Assembly: GCA_020891255.1 (NCBI GenBank)
Contig: BQFW01000003.1
Coordinates: 124,001 to 188,000 of the forward strand
Source: Entomortierella parvispora E1425
Taxonomy: Eukaryota > Fungi > Mortierellomycota
Direction of reading: 5' to 3'
Length of the DNA: 64,000 bases
Numbering within the stretch: position 1 is the stretch's first letter; the number at the start of each line of letters is the position of its first letter. The notes below the pieces were generated by a model. It worked only from the letters and a program-made list of their open reading frames with translations. It searched no databases and was not told the origin of the DNA. This document shows, piece after piece, positions 41,043-54,244 of the stretch. The translations under genes and the position numbers were made by a program.

Positions 41043-44000
41043 ATGGACATTGATCTCCCAGGAACGCAGCCTGTCCAGACCCTGATCGACGCTGGCGACC
41101 CACCTTCTTCCGTCGACAAAGGAAACGCGTTAAAAATCTTGGATCAGACCATCAACGATGGTGGAGCTGTCATGTACACTGTCCTTTGGGAAAACGGAGC
41201 CACGACTGAGGTAAGAAAGCCAAGCCAATCCAGATTTCCTTTTGGGGGCTCAACAAACCGAATTTCCCCATCATTCAGATATCGACTACTTTTTTTTTGA
41301 GCATTTGAGGAGAAAGATCTTTTTCTGTCGCGCGATCTCTCCCGCCATCTCTCTCTCGACCATTGCTTGCCCAACATCACGGGCAGGAGTAGAAAAGAGT
41401 TGGTTCCCAGGAATGTTCGCCTTGATCAAACTCTTTTTTTTTTTTTGCTCATGGAACTCGGATAGCCAAGGGGGTGTCTGAGCACCTTACTCATTCAAAC
41501 ATGACCCGGTGAGGGAGAGCAGGGTCAAACAAAGCAAAAAATAGGAGAGAGAGATTGGGTCAACTGAACAGGGACGAAAAAGGAGTGGGAATCAAGGAAA
41601 ACTATCAGGAGGGGTAGAAAAGCGGGTGCAAGAAGGAATGAATGAAGGAAGAAGGGGGGGGGATGGAGAGGCGCCTTTGACTTTCAGTTGACGGCAAGTG
41701 ATGCAGGTTATGACAGAGATTCGATGTTGTCATTCATTTTGGAGGCGACAGTTGAGAAATGAATGAGCGGGCGTTATAGGGATGGCTATCGCCCGTGCCG
41801 CACTCTCATCAAGAGTGCACCTTGAGTGCTCCATAGAAGCGTTGGCGATGATCCGACGGACAATCGTGTGCGATAGCAGGAGCACGCTATCTCTACAGAT
41901 CGCGGAGATCCTTGTGGAAGGGGGCAAAAGAAGAAAGAAAAAAAAATTCAGGGGGTGTGTGTGACATGAACATCGTGGCCAGCAAATTAACGCGTGGAGA
42001 ATCATTATTTTTGTCGCTGTGGCATGCGCGTTTAGGAATCGGTCCAGGCACTTGGAGAATGGGACGATCTCGTTCAAGAATACGAACACAGCCAGTTCTC
42101 CATGTCAGAGACCAAGCCCCCATCTCCCTCACCGCCCGTCCGTAAACCACAGCCTGCCTCGGCTGCCGACAGCGACTCGTCAAAGAAGAAGCCTGCCGCC
42201 TCAGCGCGACCCACTCGGATAAAGGCGAAAACCAACTATAATGAACAGGCAGATTCAGACGACGATGGTGCCTATGGTACGCCTACAAGTGGCAAGAAGG
42301 GCGACAAAAAATCAAAGAAAGCCTCAGCAGCCTCCAGTGGCGAGGATATTCCAAGTCCAGATCAGGATGCCGAATCGACACCAACACTCTCTGCTCGAGG
42401 ATACCCCAGGAGGGCTGCCAACACTGTAAAGCCACAGCCAAAGGCGGACTCTTCTGACGACTCTTCAGAAGAAACTACAACAACAAAGGCAGCACGGCCT
42501 GAAAGGAAAGGAGGTCCCTTCACGGCCAAGCCCAAGAAGGTGCTCTTGGCTAGCTCTACAGAGTCCAGCTTTGTGTTGGCGCATCACTCGTTCTGCACAA
42601 GATGTGGCTTGCGGGGCGAGATTACAAAGCGCAAAGGCAAGAAGAAGAGCGATGACGAAGACGACGACGAGCCCCTTGGACCTCTATTGCTTTGCGAATG
42701 CTGTGCCTCAGGATACCATCGCCTCTGTTTGAGGAAGACATATGTGGACAGCTTGGGCGATCATGGATTCAGGTGCGAGTCATGTGTCAAGAACGGTGGT
42801 GCAGAGTGCCTCGAATGCCACGAATGGGAAGGCAAGACATCCAAGGCTGTGATTAAACCCTCGACCTCCAACGGAGGATCATCAAACACGACCTCTGAGG
42901 CCGCCACCCCAACAGAAAGCGTAGCAGCAACAGAAAAGAGCGCTGACAATCCCGAAAGCACTACTGCTGAAACGGAAACGGATAAGGATCAGTCAAGCAG
43001 CATGGACATTGTCAAGGAACCATCGGCAGAGGAACCTGCCCCTGAAGCGGCAGCTGAGGGAGAAGCTACTCCTGCACCTGAAGTCCTCTTCCGCTGCTTC
43101 CGGTGTACTTATAGTGCTCACGACAGGTGTTTAAAGCCTTTGTCGACCACGGATCCCGACATTAGCCAATCCGCACTCGTTAAGTCCTACAGGAAAGACT
43201 GGAAGTGTCACCAGTGCTTGGAATGGGACCTGGAACTTGACTCGATTCTCGCCTATAGAGACGTTCCTATCCGTAAACCTGGTACTGAGGACATGGAGGT
43301 GGATGAACCTGAGCCCGTCAAGAGCAGTATTTTCCGACGAAAGGCTCAGGTCGAAGTCTCCAAGGACAAGGACGGGGCTCTGCCCCAAGCCAAAAACACG
43401 ACACGGGAGCTTTTGGTGAAGTGGAAGAACATGTCCTACCGAAGGGTGACCTGGGTTCCATACTACTGGGCTTGCCAAGTGGTTTCCTCTGCCAAGATCA
43501 AGACATTTTGGAAAAAGACGTCTGGGCCCGCTGACATTTCTGAAGTGATACCCTCAGAGTGGACCCAGGTGGATTGCATCATGGATGTTATTTTCGATTC
43601 TGAATGGCAAGGGTCAGAGGACAGCATGGATGCGCTGGATCACATCCAGACCGTTTTCGTCAAGTGGAAGTCATTGGACTATGAACATTGTAAGGATTGA
43701 CATGGCGATCATGATGGCGGCCATTTGTTTTATACCTGAGACTTACTTTTTGACATGTGATATCTTTTTAGCCACATGGGATGACCCTGACGAGCCGGAT
43801 AGCCCACATTACGCCTCCTTCAAAGCGGCGTACAAGAATTGGGCTGCTTCTTTAAAGATCAATATCCCTGCACGTGCAAAGAGGGGGCGCTCTGGTGTCC
43901 AGCCAAAGCCCGGCTCAAAGCATGCATTCGAGGAATTGAAGGTCCAGCCAGACTACATTGCTGGAGGAACACTCAAGAACTATCAATTGGATGGACTCAA

Positions 44001-47000
44001 GTAAGAACCCCCTTTTGTTTTTGTTGGAATGTCAAAGGGGCTCATGCTATTTGTAAACTGACGCTATGGTCCTTTCAACGATGTTTTTTAGTTGGATGCG
44101 GTATAACCACTTCATGGGCGTCAACAGTATTCTGGCCGATGAGATGGGTCTGGGCAAGACTATCCAGATGGTGGCTTTGGTCACGACTCTTTACCATCAA
44201 CTGGGAGCCTTCCCCTGCCTTATTGTCGTACCCAACTCGACTCTGACCAACTGGGTGCGAGAGTTTGCAAAGTGGGCACCTGATCTCCGTGTGGTTGCTT
44301 ACTATGGTCCACAAGCCTCTCGGTCGGTCGTACGAGACTATGAACTCTTCCACAGAGGCACTCAGGATCTGAAGTGCCATGTTGTAGTGACGACCTACGA
44401 GATGATTGCCAACAGCGCCGAGAATGGCATCTTCCGCAAGAACTCTTGGGAGTGCCTTGTGGTGGATGAGGGTCAGCGACTCAAGAACGAGAACAGCATG
44501 TTGTTTGTGAAGCTGAACGAACTCTCTGTGGATCATCGCGTTCTGTTGACGGGAACACCGTTGCAGAACAACATCAGGGAATTGTTCAGTTTGATGAACT
44601 TTTTGGATCCAGTCAAATTCGCGGATGTGACGGAGCTGGAGAAGAAGTACGAGAACTTGGACAAGGCTGCAGTAGAGGAACTGCATGTGGTATGTTGTCT
44701 TTTTTGGTTTTCCTTTGTCGCTCTCGTCGCTTTGATCTCGATTAGTTGACTAACTCTCTGCCGCCCTTGCATTTATAGCTCTTGAAACCTTTCTTCTTGC
44801 GCCGTACCAAAGATGAAGTTCTTAAGGATCTTCCTCCAAAGGTAATGCTCTGTGGGACAATCAGGCATCTAGAATGGAAACAGAACCTAACAAACGTGTC
44901 TCCCTTTCAATTGTTATCTGCAGAGCGAGGTCATTGTACCGGTGGGCATGTCTGCGCTTCAAAAGGAGATTTACAAAGGAGTGTTGGCTCGTAACCACAA
45001 ACTGCTCCAGTCCATCACCAACCGAGGAGGCACCGCCAGCAACCGCAAATCTTCGCTTCAGAACATCCTTATGGAGCTTCGCAAGTGCTTGAACCACCCC
45101 TACCTGATTGACGGAATCGAACCCCGCAATCTGCCTTCCATGGAGCTTGTCCACAAGAGTCTGATCGAGGCAGGAGGCAAGCTAGAGCTTCTCCACAACA
45201 TGTTGCCAAAGCTGAAACAGAACGGACATCGTGTCTTGATCTTCTCGACCATGACCCGACTCTTGGATATTCTGGAGGACTATCTGAATGGTGAACGGTA
45301 CAACTACGTGCGCTTGGATGGATCCACGACCAGCAATGATCGTCAAGCCAGGATTGACAAGTACAATGCACCTGACTCCGACGTCTTTGTGTTCTTGCTC
45401 TCGACTCGAGCTGGAGGTGTGGGAGTCAACTTGGCAACGGCTGATACCATTATCATTTACGACGTGGATTTCAACCCCAAGGCGGATATGCAGGCCCTCA
45501 GTCGCGCCCATCGTATCGGACAAAAGAACAAGGTCCTGGTGCTCAAGTTCATGACCCGCAACTCTGCCGAGGAGCGCATTGTCCAGATCGGAAAGAAAAA
45601 GATGATTCTGGATCATTTGATTGTCGAGCGCATGGAAGACGAGAACTTGGACCCAGTGGACGTGGAGAGTATTCTCAAATTCGGTGCCAAGGCCCTGTTT
45701 GAGGAGGACTCGACTGCGAACGAGGATGTCAAGTACGACGATGCTGCCCTAGACGCTCTCTTGGATCGAAGCAAGATTGAGCACAATTGGGACGATAACG
45801 ACAATGGTGAGACCAAGGTCAGCGGCTTTGGTTTCGCCAAGGTCTGGACAGAGACCAAGGGAATCGTGGACGAGGAGATCCCAATTGACGCTCCTCCAGC
45901 GGACGAAGAAGAAGGGTTCTGGTCGACTTTGCTCCGAGACCGGTTAAAGATGTCGTACGCTCAGGAAGAAGAGACCTTGGGCCGTGGCGCGCGCAGAAAG
46001 ACGGTCTTGTCCTATGCAGAGAATGGCAATGAGCAAAACAAGAAGCGCAAGGCCGGCAAGGACGCACCCGCCAAGGAAGACGATGAAGAAGAGGAGGATT
46101 ATATCGATCAGGACATGGCTGGATCCGATGCTGAATCTGTAGAGTCGGATGTAGATCCAAATGAGGTGGCCGCAGAACTGGAGGGCAAAAAGGGGGCCAA
46201 GAGGAACCGTGGCAAGCTTCTGGATCCCAACTCTGCGGATGGCACGGGCTTGGACGAGGACGGTGCTGCGAAAGCAAAGAGAGCCCGTGGCGCCCAGCCA
46301 TCTTCTCCTCTGCAAAGAGGCGAGGGACAAGGCAAGAAGGGAAGGAAGCCGTTGCCTTGCTTGGTGTGCCACAGAAGCCATCGGGATCGGTGCCCAGAGA
46401 GTCAGGACATTCCTTTGGTGTTGGAACGGAGACAGCAGATTGCAACCAGCAACTACCCAGAAAACTACAAGGAAGTGGCGTTGGCTGCTTTGGATCGGTT
46501 CTTGCTCGAGAAACAGATTCAGCCAGGCGAGTTGCCCAAGGGCAAGGTCGCAAAGTCTCTCTCGGCTGCAGCAGCAAAACTGGGTGGAACCGCTTATCAA
46601 GAGAACCTTCGGTCCATGTCAATTGGAAAGGCCTATGTCCCTACAATTACTCCGGGCGCGTGTATTGTCTGCAACCAGGTCCCGTATCACTTGCCCTTCA
46701 AGTGCCCAGAGACCCGAAACGTCCAGTTCTTGCAGGAGAGGTGCCGCAACATCACTTTGGATCCCACCATTTCAGATGCCAAGAAGCAGGAATATGTCGC
46801 CACCATCAAGGCCCTCGTGTCCAGGGAGGCCCCTCGTGGTGCTGCCCCTCTGCCCACTCTCCCGTCTGCCCGGCGACAAGGACCTTATGTGTCACAAGTG
46901 CCCTCTGGACGAGGTGGGCCAGCGTCTACGGCGGCAGGAGCTGCAGGACCTCCTGTTGGAGGGAGCAAGGTTAATTCAATGACAGGACGACAAGGAGGCG

Positions 47001-48046
47001 GTGGCGGACCTATCCAGGGACGCTCCAGCGCAAGTACATCTCATCACCCTTACGCCTCTCAGTCTCAGTCCCAATACCCGGCCTCGCAACAACAACAGTA
47101 CTCTCCAACGTCACATCGAGACAATCAACGATCGCAGCAGGACCATGCTCCTGGATATGTATTCCGGAACGGCCCCTCTTCTCAACACTCATCCTCCGGA
47201 AATGGTCAGAGCTACCCACCAAGGAAACCAGTCGATGGCTCTGGGCGTGTAGGTGTTTTCGCACCTGTGCCAGCCTATGCTGGTCGGGGAGGTGCGGCAG
47301 GTGCGCAGGACTACCAGGGCGCTCCTCGCTACAGCCAATCCGGGGCATCAGGACCTCCAAGGCAAGGAGGCAGTGCGTACACGTCGTCTGAGGATCTCCG
47401 TGGACAGGGAGACTATTCGCCACCAGATAATGTAAGCTACAACTCAGGTTTCCGATGTTCTCACCCCCTTGCAAGTCGGAAATGATGTGAAACTAACGAG
47501 TGCTTCTCAATTTATGTTTAGGATACCTATAGTTCACGCGGCGCTAACGCTCACCGGCCCGCTCAGGCGTATTCTCATGAACGTTCGCAACAACCTTACC
47601 GCTCTCAACAACAACAACAATCACCACCACAGCACCTTCAAAAACAATCACAACAGCCAATGCCTCGGACCAATGCCCTTCCCCCGCGTGATGATCTCCG
47701 CAACCCCCAACACAACCCCAAGGAAAGACGAGGACCCCCTCCCCCTCCAGAGGCTGTGATAGATCTCGTCATGTCCTCACCTACACTGGATCCCCAACAA
47801 CCACCATCACGGCAACCTAATGGATCATCCTCACACGGCGAAGAGAACGAGGCTCATTCCCCCCAGCTGTATGCATCGGAAGAGATTTCTAGTGGTCTCA
47901 AGACTAAAGTTGCAGGGATCGAGAAGTCGGCGGCGACGACGGTGGCGGTGGCGTCCAACCTGTCCACAGAGGTTTTGACGACTGAACTTTCCATCCAGGA
48001 ATCACCCCATTCGACATTTGGTCACAATGGAAACAGCCACTCGTAA
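41043..48046 (+). CDS. CHD/Mi-2-type (Mit1-like) chromatin remodelling ATPase: PHD fingers, chromodomains, SNF2 ATPase, C-terminal Cys/His knuckles
   Basis: Exon 41043-41210 splices to 42036 in frame. PHD-type Cys/His clusters; ELLVKWKNMSYRRVTW; VFVKWKSLDYEHC|ATWD; ILADEMGLGKT; LVVDEGQRLKN; LLTGTPLQNN; STRAGGVGVNLATAD; QALSRAHRIGQ. Last exon continues to stop 48046. Confidence 0.93.
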
Positions 48047-48448: not shown

Positions 48449-51400
48449 TTATTGGAACGACATCAACTTTCCAGTGATACCCATGAGTCGACCTATCGGT
48501 CCTTTGCTAGCTTTGCTCAATTGGGACATTTTCTCGAGACTTTTGATTGTATTGATGTCGGCTGCCTTTCTCAACCACTCCATAGCCTTCTCGTGATCTG
48601 GAGGAACACCCATGCCATCGTAGTGCATCAGGCCAAGATTGCGCTGCGCATCAGTGTACCCTTGGTCCGCGGCTCTAAGATACCACCCCATGGCCGTCGG
48701 ATAGTGCCGGGTTACACCCTTACCACTATGATACATTAAGCCAATGTTGAACTGAGCACTGGCGTAATCTTGATCGGCGGCCTTCAGATACCACTCCATT
48801 GCCTTCTGGTAGTCCTGGGGAACTCCTTTCCCGCCCTCGTACATCAAGCCTATGTTGAACTGGGCACTGGCCTCTTCTCTCTCTGAAATCTTCAAGTACC
48901 AGTCCATGGCTTTCTTGTAGTCCTGGGGGACGCCCTTACCACCTTGATACATCACAGCCGTATGCGCCTGCGCATCGACATTTCCTTGCTCGGCGGCCTT
49001 CAAATACCACTCCGTGGCCTTCTGGTAGTCTTGTGGGACACCCTTTCCACCATCGTACATCAAGCCCACGTTGAACTGAGACCTGGCAATCCCTTGCTCG
49101 GCGGCTTTCAAGAACCACTCCATGGCCTTCTGGTAGTCCTGTGGGACACCCTTTCCACCATCGTACATCAAGCCCACGTTGAACTGAGACCTGGCAATCC
49201 CTTGCTCGGCGGCCTTCAAAAACCACTCCATGGCCTTTTGGTAGGCCTGAGGAACACCATCTCCTTCATGGTACATGACGCCAATATTGAACTGAGAACT
49301 GGCGTCCCCTTGCTCGGCAGCCTTCAAAAACCATTCCATGGCCCTCCGGTAGTCCTGAGGAACACCTTCTCCATCATTGTACATCACACCAATATTGAAC
49401 TGAGAACTGGCGTCTCCTTGCTCGGCGGCCTTCAAATACCACTCCATGGCCTTTTGGTAGTCCTGAGGAACACCCTTTCCATCACTGTACATCACACCAA
49501 TATTGGACTGAGAACTGGCGTGCTGTTGCTCGGCAGCCTTCAAATACCACTCCATGGCCTTCTGATGGTCCTGAGGAACACCCTTTCCATCACTGTACAT
49601 CACACCAATATTGAACTGAGAACTGGCGTCTCCTTGCTCGGCGGACTTCAAAAACCATTCCATGGCCTTTTGGTAGTCCTGAGGAACATCCTCTCCACTG
49701 TACAACATCACACCAATATTGAACTGAGAACTGGCGTCTCCTTGCTCGGCGGCCTTCAAAAACCATTCCATGGCCTTTTGGTAGTCCTGAGGAACATCCT
49801 CTCCACTGTACAACATCACACCAATATTGAACTGAGAACTGGCAATTCCTTGCTCGGCGGCCTTCCAATACCACTCCATAGCCTTCTGGTAGTCTTGTGG
49901 AACACCCTCTCCACTGTAGTACATCGCACCAATGTTGTGCTGAGCCCTGGCAATCCCTTGCTCGGCGGCCATCAAAAACCACTCCATGGCCTTCTGGTGG
50001 TCCTGAGGAAGACCCTTTCCGCCATAGTACATCACACCAATGTTGAGCTGAGAACTGGCATCCCCTTGCTCGGCAGCCTTCAAAAACCATTCCATGGCCC
50101 TCCGGTAGTCCTGAGGAACACCTTCTCCATCATTGTACATCACACCAACATTGAACTGAGAACTGGCGTCTCCTTGCTCGGCGGCCTTCAAATACCACTC
50201 CATGGCCTTTTGGTAGTCCTGAGGAACACCCTTTCCATCACTGTACATCACACCAATATTGAACTGAGAACTGGCGTCTCCTTGCTCGGCGGACTTCAAA
50301 AACCACTCCATGGCCTTCTGGTGGTCCTGAGGAACACCCTCTCCATAATGATATAAGCCGCCCATGTTGGTTTGCGCGGGAGCATAGTCCTGGGCGGCAG
50401 ACTTGAGATACCACTCTCTGGCCGCAACAAGATCCTGAGGCACGCCATTGCCCTTAAAGTACATATCTCCAGTTCTGTTCTGAGCTTCAGCGTGTCCCTG
50501 CATTGCCGCTTTGGAATAGCACTCCATTGCTTTCGTATAGTCCTGTGGAGCGTTCTTTCCTAGATAATAGATTTCTCCTAGGCTGAACAAGGCGTCGGCA
50601 CTCCCTTGGGCCGCTGCCTTTGAATACCATTTTATAGCCAATGAAATGTCAAGCGGAAGTCCTTTGGAATGCTGATAAAATGAGCCTAGATTGAACTGGG
50701 CTATGGTGTGTCTTCGGTTGGCCGCTTGTAAGTACCACTCTGAGGCTTTCAGATAATCTCGAGCTACGCCATCACCTTCATCGTACATTGAGCCAAGGTT
50801 GAACTGAGCATCGGCGTATCCTTGATCGGCAGCTTTCAGATACCATTCAATGGCTTCGGATTTGTTCTGCGGGAGAATTGTACCAACGTGAAGCAAGAGT
50901 CCTATGTAGTACTGAGCCTGTGCAAGCCCTTGGTCTGCAGCTTTCCTGTACCATCTCACAGCCAACAGACGGTCCTGTGAAACGCCTCTGCCATGTTGGT
51001 ACAAGATGCCAAGGTTGAACTGAGCATCGGCCAATCCTTGGGTGGCCGCCTTCTTATACCATTCAGCTGCTGCGTAGTCGTCATGAGTAACGCCCTCGCC
51101 CCCCTCGTACATTGCACCTATACTGAATTGGGCAATTGCGCACCCTTTGTCCGATGCCCTCAGGTACCACTCCATGGCTTTCGATAGGTCCTGTGGAGTG
51201 CCGTAACCCTTGTAATACATCACGCCAACACTGAACTGGGCGATTCCGTGCCCTTGCTGTGCGGCCTTCAGGAACCACTCTACAGCCTTAGGGTGGTCGT
51301 CGTCTCGACGATAGATCATTCCCAAGTTGAATTGGGCATCAGCGAATCCTTGGTCGGCGGCTCGGAAAAACCACTCCTTAGCAGTCGAGTCGCTCTTGGG

Positions 51401-51823
51401 AACACCTTTGCCGTCTCGATACAGGATGCCGACACTGTTCTGAGCAGAGCTGTTTCCTTGGAGAGCTGCCTTCATGTACCATACCATGGCCCAGGTATAG
51501 TTTTGAGGAACACCATCGCCTTTATCATACATTCGTCCAACATTGTACTGGGTGGTCGAATTCCTTTCAGTGAGATCGTCCATTCTATCAAGTCAGTTCA
51601 TGACACAGAGACGACAGGTTGTCAGGGTGGGAGTATAATCGAGACGTTTCTACGTGGGTTTCTTTGACTGGCATCAATACCTGAGTCCATTCAATTCTTG
51701 TATCAATCCAGTATGGTCCTGCCCATCCATTGTATGATTGTTGCGATCACTGATACCTTGGATGCAGATCTTTTCGACAACAGACGGGATAGGACCATGG
51801 TGAGGTGCTTGCATCTCTTCCAT
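48449..51823 (-). CDS. Sel1-like repeat (SLR) protein, 28 repeats, about 1092 aa, no signal peptide
   Basis: 36-aa repeats GxAxAQFNxGxMYxxGxGVPQDYxKAMEWYxKAAxQ. An upstream exon 51823-51681 (MEEMQAPHHG...NGLR) splices in phase 2 via GTATTG...CTGAC..TGATAG to 51584. Confidence 0.95.
48986..50281 (-). repeat. Tandem array of 12 highly similar 108-bp units inside the Sel1 gene
   Basis: 108-nt periodicity with near-identical neighbouring units (49021 vs 49129; 49681 vs 49789) and a 756-nt-offset duplicated pair (49345 vs 50101). Confidence 0.95.
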
Positions 51824-52522: not shown

Positions 52523-54244
52523 TCATCGTCTGGAAGGACTGCGACTACGACTTCTCCGGCGATAATCATCTCTTCGGTCGCGATAGCGGTCACGACTCCT
52601 GCTCCTGCTATAGCTACGATGACGGGATGATCTACCATCGCGGTCATCGTCATATCTACGGCTGCTGCCTCGTCCGTCATCTCGACCGCCACGGTCCCTG
52701 GATCTAGAGCGGTACCGAGATCCAGGGCCTCTATGACTATCCCGTTGATCACGGCCTCGGTCCCGATCGCCTCGATCTCCTCCTCGATCTCCACTTCGGC
52801 CACCTCGGTCCCTGTTGTCTGGCCTGTCTTTCCTAAAAGTCGCGCCAGTTGTAGAGAAATTAGCTCCAGCTGGGTGAAATACACGCAACAACTGCTCAGA
52901 GAGTAAGGCACAAATAGAAAAAAAGCAGCTTACCTGAAATGATCACGTTGACCCATCTTGGCGCGGCCGGCATCTGCATATGGCTCCAACTTTGTCTCCA
53001 GATCGCGCATCACCAAGACTGGAATACGAGGTAGAATCTGTCCAAGAAACTTTTGATCATGAAGCAACATGTAGCACATCTTGCCGATAGTTCTACAACA
53101 CAAAATTATCTATCGTCAGCTCTTATATCCGTGAGGCGCGTTCAATTTTGCATTGAAATAAATCTTACGAGTATACGGGCTTGACACCGCCTTGGAGCTG
53201 AATCTCCTGATCGTCCTCCAGATAAGGTCCAAGCCAATCCCACAGCTGATCTGGCTTGCAGACATATCTCAAGTAGAGAAAACCAAGGCCTCTCAAGTAG
53301 CTAATAACAATGAATGAAGAAAGTTGGTTGTTGGCATGAGTGTCAGGGTATCCGATCAGGTTTCACAGTCAGCATAGTTGGATTCAGTTGCCTATGTTCA
53401 CTTACACCGAGTGTGGGTGGTCGATCAAGTTCTCCAACTGCCTGACAGTCAAGGGCAAAGTCCAGAACTTGTACATGATAACCCATGCAGTCGATGGAGT
53501 GGTTCCTTTCAAGAATGGCTCTATTAGAGTATCACAGATGCAAGATCCCATGGTTAATAAAAATATGGAAAAGTGAGGTTTTCACCCCTCTAAATCGCCA
53601 CTCCACTCTTCAAAATCCCGATAGCTTTGTTCAAATATCTGTGGAACAATCAACACGAGCTGAACATTACTGTGTATGCCACAGGGCGCTTCCTCGTCAC
53701 TCGATCCATGTCTGCCTCATCGACTATCGAAGGATCCTTCTTGTAATGCAAAATTTCACCGAGGCTTACCCATGGATTTCACTAAAAACAGAGATGCAAA
53801 GGACAATTGTTAGTTTCGTTCATGTCCTTTCCCAGGTGGGTACACATACGATACATCCATGGAGGTGAAAAGAGACTCGATTGAGGTAAAAGCCAACCCT
53901 CGATCTGCTGCTCGGTCCGTTCTCCTCTGAAGGTAGGCGCGACGAAACTTGAGAGTGGGAAAACAGGACCCTAAGCAAAGGCACATTGTAGTGGAGGCAA
54001 CCTACCGTTTCGTTGAGCTTCATTTTGGACTTCCTGAAAGGTCTCCATTTCGCTAGAAGAGCAGTTTCAAAGAGAGAAGGGAGCATGAGTTGACCTGATC
54101 ACCCCATGACGTCAAACAGTGATATTCAATAGCCACGTACCTGATGGTGCGGAGGTAGGGCGAGTCAATGATGTTCTGGAAGAGGACCGAGTTGAGGTTC
54201 ATAGTCCTGGCATTGCCGTGCGTCTCCAGCTGATTCGAGCTCAT
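52523..54244 (-). CDS. PRP38: Pre-mRNA splicing factor 38 (PRP38B-like) with RS/RD tail
   Basis: MSSNQLETHGNARTMNLNSVLFQNIIDSPY; STAWVIMYKFWTLPLTVRQL..LIDHPHSV|YLRGLGFLYLRY; LWDWLGPYLEDD; C-terminal RSRSRSPSRR. Seven exons including a 12-nt microexon. Confidence 0.92.

What the first reader, a model, noticed from the sequence alone, without database searches (positions are those of the whole stretch)
48986..50281. Sel1 protein with a recently homogenised, shuffled repeat block and concentrated variable positions
Seen: repeats 1-11 and 25-28 are divergent, while repeats 13-24 are near-identical at DNA level. Duplication steps can be read off: R17 and R18, R23 and R24, and the pair R13-14 recurs as R20-21, 756 nt away. 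Amino-acid differences within the block cluster at a few positions: after VMY (SDGKG, NDGEG, YGGKG, YSGEG/YSGED, HEGDG, DGGKG) and at the repeat start (GDASS, GIARS, QHASS). Known: fungal non-self receptors such as Podospora HET-D/E diversify by concerted evolution and shuffling of near-identical repeats with hypervariable surface residues. Inference: this may be a Sel1-based analogue, a cytosolic recognition protein whose binding surface is regenerated by unequal crossing-over, possibly sensing bacteria or endosymbionts.
Basis: partly seen in the sequence, partly recalled or inferred. Interest (0 to 1): 0.75.

Follow-up and report, generated by a model that had tools for sequence, protein, structure and literature searches.

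The report
Sel1-repeat gene with young internal block
A soil fungus gene encodes a long helical repeat protein whose middle dozen repeats arose by duplication and reshuffling and differ mainly on the likely binding face. Those differences fit relaxed constraint as well as adaptation, so an immune-receptor role is not shown.

Summary
Window 48449-51583 (minus strand) is one open frame of 28 Sel1 units, each exactly 36 aa. Units 13-24 are 77-99% identical in DNA. The named twins are real (R14/R21 99%, R13/R19 96%, R17/R18 96%, R23/R24 95%), and the other units are 44-68% alike.

I add four points:
- The young tract starts inside R12 (window 50344).
- The gene has a hidden 47-codon first exon (51681-51823) and a 96-nt intron.
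- The same genome, probably Entomortierella parvispora E1425 from a Nanopore assembly, holds at least 30 paralogous Sel1 loci.
- Six paralogs share one plan: a conserved N-terminal scaffold, their own homogenised block, then further units.

Units cluster by gene and show recombination mosaics. The variable positions lie on one face of helix 1, the concave face in solved Sel1 and TPR structures. They are also the most variable positions in old units (Spearman 0.80). Their dN/dS is about 1 (0.98-1.14, CI 0.89-1.46), against 0.36 for the other positions.

There is no NOD or effector domain. Strain polymorphism could not be tested. The HET-D/E analogy is therefore only partly supported.

The scan's first readers flagged similar Sel1 arrays elsewhere in this genome (s1-193919, s1-190180).

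The parts
51681..51823 (-). Exon 1: ATG at 51823, 47 codons plus 2 nt. It encodes a short N-terminal head with no Pfam match.
   Evidence: ORF 51674..51823. The donor (CAG|GTATTG) and reading phase are conserved in 13 paralogs. A profile of the paralogs' first exons hits only sites just upstream of family members in the whole genome, including this one at E = 9e-20. No Pfam family matches.
51585..51680 (-). Intron, 96 nt, GT..AG, phase 2, with a CTGAC branch-like site.
   Evidence: Sequence read. The junction codon AGA keeps the frame into the long ORF, for a total CDS of 3279 nt. Paralogs have introns of 76-113 nt at the same place. No RNA evidence was available.
48449..51584 (-). Exon 2: 28 Sel1 units plus a C-terminal tail and the stop codon.
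   Evidence: The AlphaFold2 model has mean pLDDT 90.5 and is all helix-loop-helix.
50390..51577 (-). N-terminal scaffold, units R1-R11. These are old, divergent units with positional counterparts in the paralogs.
   Evidence: Within-gene DNA identity is 49-68%. The best matches are units at the same rank in other paralogs, at 69-81%.
50345..50389 (-). First 15 codons of R12: old sequence just upstream of the block boundary.
   Evidence: 23 of 45 bases differ from the block consensus.
48986..50344 (-). Homogenised block: R12 codon 16 through R24, about 12.6 units of 108 nt.
   Evidence: Identity matrix, dot alignment, TRF array, recombination tests and unit tree.
48554..48985 (-). C-terminal scaffold, units R25-R28. 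R25, R27 and R28 are old; R26 is 81% identical to the block.
   Evidence: R25 and R28 resemble the corresponding C-terminal units of paralog L007 in protein sequence and rank.
48452..48553 (-). C-terminal tail of 34 aa, modelled with low confidence. Its motif recurs in paralogs L013 and L005.
   Evidence: pLDDT is below 50 for residues 1026-1044.

Best explanation
This is one member of a large, lineage-expanded family of probably cytosolic Sel1-like-repeat (SLR) solenoid proteins in a Mortierellaceae fungus.

The predicted protein has about 1092 aa: a 47-aa head, 28 SLR units and a short tail. It is modelled as a right-handed superhelix of roughly 3.5-4 turns.

Its middle part (R12 codon 16 to R24) was built over time by unequal crossing-over or replication slippage between 108-nt units. 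Gene conversion with breakpoints inside units then reshuffled it. The last few duplications are very recent, with synonymous difference 0-0.05.

Purifying selection keeps the fold-determining residues (dN/dS 0.36). The exposed residues of helix 1 and the adjacent loops drift at about the neutral rate. This yields a long concave groove with an invariant Asn at unit position 8 and variable neighbours.

The most likely function is binding of an extended peptide or another protein as an adaptor or scaffold. The same process has run independently in at least five paralogs.

Shown: the gene anatomy, the duplication and recombination history, the family-wide plan, and the fold.
Inferred: the cytosolic location, the binding groove, and the adaptor role.
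For: - Unit anatomy and identity matrix.
- Recombination mosaics.
- Units of each of six paralogs form one group on the tree, with 5 label changes (the minimum possible) against 40.5 when labels are shuffled.
- At least 30 paralogous loci, six with their own homogenised block after a shared scaffold of about 11 units.
- Overall dN/dS 0.31-0.66, with about 1 at predicted groove positions and 0.36 elsewhere.
- AF2 model with pLDDT 90.5 and a 13/7/13/3 helix-loop pattern identical to c5321: PMC3851747.
- Foldseek TM-scores (normalised to the target) of 0.77-0.90 to 6ok3, 4bwr, LceB, HcpC and a further Oxalobacter Sel1 structure (6ork).
- PDB sequence hits at E = 1e-94 and 6e-88.
- In c5321, helix 1 forms the concave face and a conserved helix-1 Asn anchors a bound peptide backbone: PMC3851747.
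- TPR positions 2, 5, 6, 9, 12 and 13 (equal to positions 4, 7, 8, 11, 14 and 15 here) are the ligand contacts: PMC1261162.
- Internally conserved Sel1 blocks are frequent: 18 of 120 long Sel1 proteins have at least 4 units with a twin of at least 85% identity.
- The assembly matches a Nanopore 409x genome, so the 1.3-kb array was spanned by reads.
Against: - No ligand, expression or localisation data exist.
- Omega near 1 could hide a mixture of constrained and positively selected sites. My counting method (UPGMA tree, parsimony, Nei-Gojobori sites) is crude, and recombination blurs it.
- Relative to old units, the young blocks keep proportionally more variation at positions 14, 15, 2, 7 and 4 than at helix-2 surface positions such as 24, 27 and 35. 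This leans slightly towards focused diversification.
Confidence: 0.6

Rival explanations
1. Diversifying recognition protein. The block is a binding surface that unit shuffling keeps regenerating, with positive selection on the groove residues. It would serve non-self or symbiont sensing, analogous to the WD, ANK and TPR arrays of fungal NLRs.
For: - Shuffling and within-gene homogenisation are real and recur in six paralogs.
- Variable residues map to the predicted ligand face (PMC1261162, PMC3851747).
- Young blocks hold relatively more variation at groove positions than old units do.
- Paralogs L002 and L008 give omega 1.7-2.0 at groove positions, though on few silent changes.
- The same genome has a NACHT-WD40 protein ending in Sel1 units and a kinase-Sel1 fusion.
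- The probable host strain carries a Mycoavidus endobacterium (PMC8759367).
Against: - Pooled omega is 0.98-1.14 with a CI that includes 1, and 0.90 in this gene. The best single codon has nominal P = 0.028 before correction for 36 tests.
- There is no NOD, effector or other signalling domain.
- The first-exon motif is found nowhere else in the genome, so no partner shares it.
- Block units are not exchanged between paralogs.
- The gene lies among housekeeping genes, not in an immune-like cluster.
Confidence: 0.2
2. Functionless repeat drift. The middle of the array is a slippage-prone tract whose unit number drifts neutrally, and the gene may be on its way to decay.
For: - Groove positions evolve at the neutral rate.
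- Paralogs L003 and L008 carry in-frame stops in their last units.
- Several family loci contain stops.
Against: - The 3.1-kb frame is intact.
- Scaffold positions inside the block are under clear purifying selection (omega 0.28-0.36).
- Fold-determining residues are kept in all 12 units.
- The model is confident throughout.
Confidence: 0.12
3. Assembly artefact. The number or order of near-identical units is wrong.
For: Nanopore assemblies can mis-size tandem arrays, and I could not inspect reads.
Against: - Units differ by 1-23% in a consistent mosaic, and the frame is intact over 3.1 kb.
- Six separate loci show the same architecture.
- The probable source assembly had 409x Nanopore coverage with reads of at least 1 kb plus Illumina polishing (PMC8759367), and the array is only 1.3 kb.
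Confidence: 0.04

Closest known systems
Podospora anserina nwd family (HET-D, HET-E, HET-R): NACHT-WD40 proteins with highly conserved, concertedly evolving WD repeats (as described in PMC4986451)
   Same: Tandem units of one gene are much more alike than units of ordinary repeat proteins. Units are duplicated and reshuffled, and amino-acid differences concentrate at a few positions on the interaction surface.
   Different: - The repeat here is Sel1 (alpha-solenoid), not WD40.
- There is no NACHT domain and no HET effector domain.
- Positive selection was not detected (omega about 1).
- No exchange of block units between paralogs was seen.
- Mean unit identity is 78% in protein, against about 85% in Podospora.
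- No allele data are available.
Highly conserved TPR and ANK arrays of fungal NLRs (Dyrka et al. 2014, PMC4986451)
   Same: Both are alpha-helical repeats of the TPR clan. The variable sites lie in the helices of the concave face.
   Different: Those arrays are C-terminal sensor domains of NB-ARC or NACHT proteins in Dikarya, with demonstrated repeat-number polymorphism and positive selection. This is a repeat-only protein in Mortierellomycota with neither property shown.
Bacterial SLR proteins with solved structures: c5321/EsiB (4bwr), Oxalobacter Sel1 protein (6ok3), LceB, LpnE, HcpC
   Same: The unit geometry is the same (13-residue helix, 7-residue loop, 13-residue helix, 3-residue loop). 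Identity is 35-39%, and TM-scores normalised to the target are 0.77-0.90. Helix 1 forms the concave face, and an Asn there anchors a bound peptide.
   Different: The bacterial proteins have about 7-12 repeats, as judged from chain lengths. From my own knowledge, most are secreted or periplasmic. This protein has 28 repeats, is eukaryotic and probably cytosolic, and has a short family-specific head.
Expanded Sel1-like gene families of Glomeromycotina (Rhizophagus and others; PMC8647823, PMC9453076)
   Same: Both are lineage-specific expansions of Sel1 genes in a Mucoromycota-grade fungus. Kinase-Sel1 fusions occur in the same genome.
   Different: Those papers describe copy number and genome compartment, not within-gene homogenised blocks. 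The Mortierellaceae family here has its own conserved plan of head, scaffold and block.

Membership tests
Sel1-like repeat (SLR) proteins, Pfam PF08238 | Tandem repeats of about 36 aa matching the Sel1 profile | tested here: met
   28 stretches, E = 0, 970 bits against a cut-off of 30.7.
Sel1-like repeat (SLR) proteins, Pfam PF08238 | Helix-loop-helix units stacking into a superhelix like solved SLR structures | tested here: met
   AF2 pLDDT 90.5 with a 13/7/13/3 pattern in every unit. Foldseek matches 6ok3, 4bwr, 8sxq, 6ork and 1ouv with TM-scores (target) of 0.77-0.90.
Fungal NLR-type hypervariable repeat receptors (HET-D/E, nwd, NB-ARC-TPR) | Central NACHT or NB-ARC nucleotide-binding domain | tested here: not met
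   Pfam finds only Sel1/TPR-clan matches in exon 2 and nothing in exon 1. The upstream intergenic space is about 830 nt.
Fungal NLR-type hypervariable repeat receptors (HET-D/E, nwd, NB-ARC-TPR) | N-terminal effector domain (HET, HeLo, PNP_UDP and others) | tested here: not met
   The head is 47 aa with no Pfam match. Its motif occurs only upstream of Sel1 family genes.
Fungal NLR-type hypervariable repeat receptors (HET-D/E, nwd, NB-ARC-TPR) | High internal repeat conservation (over 85% protein identity over at least 100 aa, PMC4986451) | tested here: inconclusive
   Mean unit identity in the block is 78% in protein (range 67-97%). Only subsets such as R13/R19/R20, R14/R21, R17/R18 and R23/R24 exceed 85%.
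Fungal NLR-type hypervariable repeat receptors (HET-D/E, nwd, NB-ARC-TPR) | Positive diversifying selection at a few surface positions | tested here: inconclusive
   Omega at the groove positions is 0.98-1.14 pooled (CI 0.89-1.46) and 0.90 in this gene. The best codon has nominal P = 0.028, uncorrected. The method is crude and no population sample was available.
Fungal NLR-type hypervariable repeat receptors (HET-D/E, nwd, NB-ARC-TPR) | Repeat shuffling within the gene and exchange between family members | tested here: inconclusive
   Shuffling within the gene is met. Exchange of block units between genes is not seen. One probable conversion tract between the scaffolds of two other paralogs was found.
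Fungal NLR-type hypervariable repeat receptors (HET-D/E, nwd, NB-ARC-TPR) | Repeat-number polymorphism among strains | not testable with these tools
   No second isolate was reachable.
Lineage-expanded Sel1 gene families of Mucoromycota-grade fungi | Many paralogs in one genome, with kinase-Sel1 fusions alongside | tested here: met
   61 matches in at least 30 loci. A kinase plus 10 Sel1 units lies at L018:1909-4074. Named Mortierellaceae relatives appear.

The most novel reading that the evidence does not exclude
The Mortierellaceae head-scaffold-block Sel1 family could be a repertoire of modular peptide or protein receptors. Each gene would keep an invariant backbone-anchoring Asn ladder while regenerating its specificity residues by unit shuffling. 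That would make it a NOD-less, Sel1-based counterpart of the hypervariable repeat sensors of fungal NLRs, possibly working with the kinase-Sel1 or NACHT-WD40-Sel1 proteins of the same genome in microbe or endosymbiont sensing.
Probability: 0.15. Interest if true: 0.7.

Novelty: new member of a known kind. Interest (0 to 1): 0.35.

Why it matters
If the groove residues proved to be under diversifying selection and the unit number polymorphic, this family would extend the shuffled hypervariable repeat strategy of fungal immune receptors in two ways: to a new repeat type, and to early-diverging fungi that host endobacteria.

As it stands, the finding documents how long Sel1 arrays grow: internal expansion between two conserved scaffolds, independently in several paralogs. 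It also corrects the gene model by adding a hidden first exon. Both points help annotation and any later functional work on Mortierellaceae Sel1 genes.

Tried and rejected
- Exact look-up of the 1044-aa ORF found nothing in the protein collection. The deposited model probably includes exon 1.
- The word search with the N-terminal 434 aa was swamped by generic Sel1 proteins. The best named relative was only 52% identical (Mortierella alpina), so no ortholog or allele comparison was possible.
- I considered that the head might be a signalling motif shared with a partner protein. A profile search of the whole genome found it only upstream of family members.
- I considered a 7-unit (one superhelical turn) periodicity of duplications. 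Other paralogs show 2-, 4-, 5- and 6-unit spacings, so I rejected it.
- The WD40 units of the NACHT-WD40-Sel1 gene show no DNA-level homogenisation.
- Model coordinates are not exposed by the tools, so solvent accessibility could not be computed.
- The large representative-protein search was not used, because the family assignment is not in doubt.
Full report
**The sequence**

The finding lies in a minus-strand open frame, window 48449..51583, of 1044 codons. Cut every 36 residues from residue 3, it gives 28 in-register Sel1 units. Pfam PF08238 matches 28 times at E = 0. Tandem Repeats Finder reports a 108-nt array at 48573-50346 with score 1928.

Identity matrix:
- R13-R24 are 77-99% identical in DNA.
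- Twins: R14/R21 99%, R13/R19 96%, R13/R20 95%, R17/R18 96%, R23/R24 95%.
- R4-R11, R25, R27 and R28 are 44-72% identical to any other unit.
- R13-14 recurs as R20-21 at 97% over 216 nt.

- The block is less uniform than 'near-identical' implies. Mean identity is 85% in DNA and 78% in protein, and mean synonymous difference is 0.31, ranging 0-0.57.
- Its 5' edge lies inside R12 at codon 15/16 (window 50344). The second half of R12 differs from the block consensus at 3 of 63 bases, the first half at 23 of 45.
- R26 is a more distant member of the block (81%).

**Source genome**

The window is eukaryotic. Neighbouring frames carry PHD/chromo, SNF2 helicase C, ARID, F-box and Suc_Fer-like domains, and no tRNA is found. 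The assembly is 38.9 Mb in 20 contigs. The best named relatives of the protein are Mortierellaceae.

Earlier notes of this scan name the genome Entomortierella parvispora. I took that as a lead. That assembly has 19 nuclear contigs plus a mitochondrion and was built from 409x Nanopore reads polished with Illumina (PMC8759367). The totals differ by about 0.16 Mb, so the identification is probable, not proven. If it holds, reads spanned the 1.3-kb array, and an assembly artefact is unlikely.

**Gene model**

Most paralogs lack an ATG before their first unit. All have a conserved donor (CAG|GTA) about 80-110 nt upstream of a YAG acceptor.

In this gene:
- Exon 1 is 51681-51823 (47 codons plus 2 nt).
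- The intron is 51585-51680 (96 nt, GT..AG).
- Exon 2 is 48449-51584. The junction codon AGA keeps the frame, giving a CDS of 3279 nt.

The first exons of 13 family genes align weakly around a G-F-E-N-x-H-x-x-G-like motif. A profile of them hits the genome only just upstream of family members. Exon 1 has no Pfam match. The next gene upstream ends about 830 nt away, so there is no room for a large N-terminal domain.

**Family context**

The genome holds at least 30 related Sel1 loci. I cut 483 full units from 32 frames.

Six genes show the same plan: this one (L001), L002, L003, L007, L008 and L020. Each has a scaffold of about 11 old units with positional counterparts across paralogs, then a block of 5-18 units that resemble each other far more than anything else, then further units. 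This gene and L007 also share a recognisable C-terminal scaffold. L003 and L008 instead carry in-frame stops in their last units.

On a tree of the 66 block units, each gene's units form one group. That needs 5 label changes, the minimum possible, against 40.5 for shuffled labels. Expansion or homogenisation therefore happened within each gene, and I see no exchange of block units between genes.

Silent-site difference inside this block averages 0.31. It is 0.40-0.76 between scaffold units and their nearest paralog, and 0.75 among old units. The block is thus younger than the gene duplications, but it was built over a long period; only the last steps are recent.

**Shuffling**

Among 28 informative sites in the 12 units, 109 of 378 pairs show all four gametes. 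Incompatibility rises with distance (permutation P = 0.002). At least 9 recombination or recurrent-mutation events are needed. Codon 2 alternates between GAC and ATT, which differ at all three bases, in combinations that only exchange can explain economically.

**Location of the variable positions**

Replacement changes are unevenly spread (P = 0.0008 here, P < 0.00005 pooled). Codons 15, 2, 17, 14, 7 and 30 carry 56% of them.

The AlphaFold2 model, built on an alignment of 15 paralogs, has mean pLDDT 90.5. Every unit shows a 13-residue helix (positions 3-15), a 7-residue loop (16-22), a 13-residue helix (23-35) and a 3-residue loop. This is exactly the geometry of E. coli c5321, where helix 1 forms the concave face and a conserved helix-1 Asn hydrogen-bonds a bound peptide backbone (PMC3851747). 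Foldseek and sequence searches confirm the SLR fold.

Aligning the L-G-x-x-Y core gives an offset of +2 to TPR numbering. Positions 4, 7, 8, 11, 14 and 15 then equal TPR positions 2, 5, 6, 9, 12 and 13, the ligand contacts of Hop. Position 2 equals TPR position 34 (PMC1261162). The spacing 4, 7, 11, 14/15 is one helical face. Position 8 is Asn in all 12 block units.

The variable residues therefore very probably line the concave groove around an Asn ladder. This is inferred by homology.

**Test for diversifying selection**

I counted silent and replacement changes by parsimony on unit trees for the six blocks. Overall dN/dS is 0.31-0.66.

| Position set | Omega |
|---|---|
| Seven predicted groove positions, own silent rate | 0.98 |
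| Seven predicted groove positions, pooled silent rate | 1.14 (95% interval 0.89-1.46) |
| All other positions, own silent rate | 0.37 |
| All other positions, pooled silent rate | 0.36 |
| Groove positions, this gene alone | 0.90 (0.51-1.54) |

The best single codon (position 14) has nominal P = 0.028 before correcting for 36 tests.

Positional entropy in young blocks correlates with that in 329 old units at Spearman 0.80. The concentrated variable positions are therefore the positions that vary in all Sel1 units.

There is a mild excess. Young blocks retain relatively more variation at positions 14, 15, 2, 7 and 4 than at helix-2 surface positions. Paralogs L002 and L008 give omega 1.7-2.0, on few silent changes. 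The data fit relaxed constraint and do not exclude weak or episodic positive selection.

**Comparison with known systems**

[quoted passage not shown] These show internal conservation above 85%, repeat-number polymorphism, shuffling within and between paralogs, and positive selection on the interaction face.

Here, within-gene shuffling and the surface location are met. Internal conservation is borderline. Positive selection is not shown. Inter-gene exchange of block units is not seen. Polymorphism is untestable. The NOD and effector domains that define NLRs are absent. The gene should not be filed as an NLR-type receptor.

Sel1 expansions are well known in Glomeromycotina (PMC8647823, PMC9453076). 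Kinase-Sel1 fusions occur in this genome too. Internally conserved Sel1 blocks are not rare: 18 of 120 long Sel1 proteins have at least 4 units with a twin of at least 85% identity. These include two Mortierellaceae proteins, a bacterial CHAT-domain protein and a Tritrichomonas kinase. That sample is biased towards consensus-like arrays. I found no paper describing concerted evolution of Sel1 units in fungi.

**Verdict**

This is a real and well-resolved example of internal repeat expansion and reshuffling in a lineage-expanded Sel1 solenoid family. It comes with a corrected gene model and a family-wide architecture.

The immune-receptor reading remains a minority possibility, which I put at about 0.15-0.2. 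Alleles from other isolates, read-level confirmation and expression data would decide it. First readers of this scan flagged the same kind of array on other pieces of this genome (s1-193919, s1-190180).

Noticed in passing
L033:2069-6484 (+) = G000:C13:2055568-2059983: A single 1471-aa frame combines NACHT (aa 96-256, E = 6e-11), about 13 WD40 repeats and 3 Sel1 units at the C-terminus. It is an NLR-like protein carrying Sel1 units in the same genome. Its WD40 units are not homogenised at the DNA level (no TRF array). The upstream frame L033:525-2069, which has an ARM-like repeat, abuts it.
   Followed up: partly
L018:1909-4074 (-) = within G000:C13:2073500-2080500: A protein kinase domain (aa 11-231) is fused to 10 Sel1 units, the kinase-Sel1 architecture known from Rhizophagus.
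   Followed up: no
L002:1725-2385 against L020 (G000:C1 and G000:C5): A tract of about 600 nt covering scaffold units 3-7 is 80-98% identical between two paralogs on different contigs. Flanks are 67-72% identical and the upstream DNA about 50%. This is probably an ectopic gene-conversion tract between family members.
   Followed up: partly
window 48452-48553 (-); also the C-termini of the L013 and L005 frames: The C-terminal tail after the last unit carries a recurring motif (K-G-P-I-G-R-L-M-like) in several paralogs. In c5321 and HcpC crystals a C-terminal tail sits in a neighbour's concave groove, so the tail could be a self-ligand. This is untested.
   Followed up: no
L003 frame at aa 949 onward and L008 frame at aa 799 onward: Two block-bearing paralogs have in-frame stop codons inside their last units, so they are truncated relative to the family plan.
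   Followed up: no
window 42102-47485 (+): Two long frames (PHD/chromo, then helicase C with an HDA2-3-like region) look like exons of one CHD/Mi-2-type chromatin remodeller next to the Sel1 gene. An Arg/Ser-rich frame lies at 52523-52891 (-) just upstream. The Sel1 gene therefore sits among housekeeping genes.
   Followed up: no
G000:C2:2486500-2508000 and G000:C8:3183000-3227500: Several Sel1 family genes lie in tandem clusters on contig 2 (at least five frames within 21 kb) and contig 8. The gene studied here is solitary.
   Followed up: no
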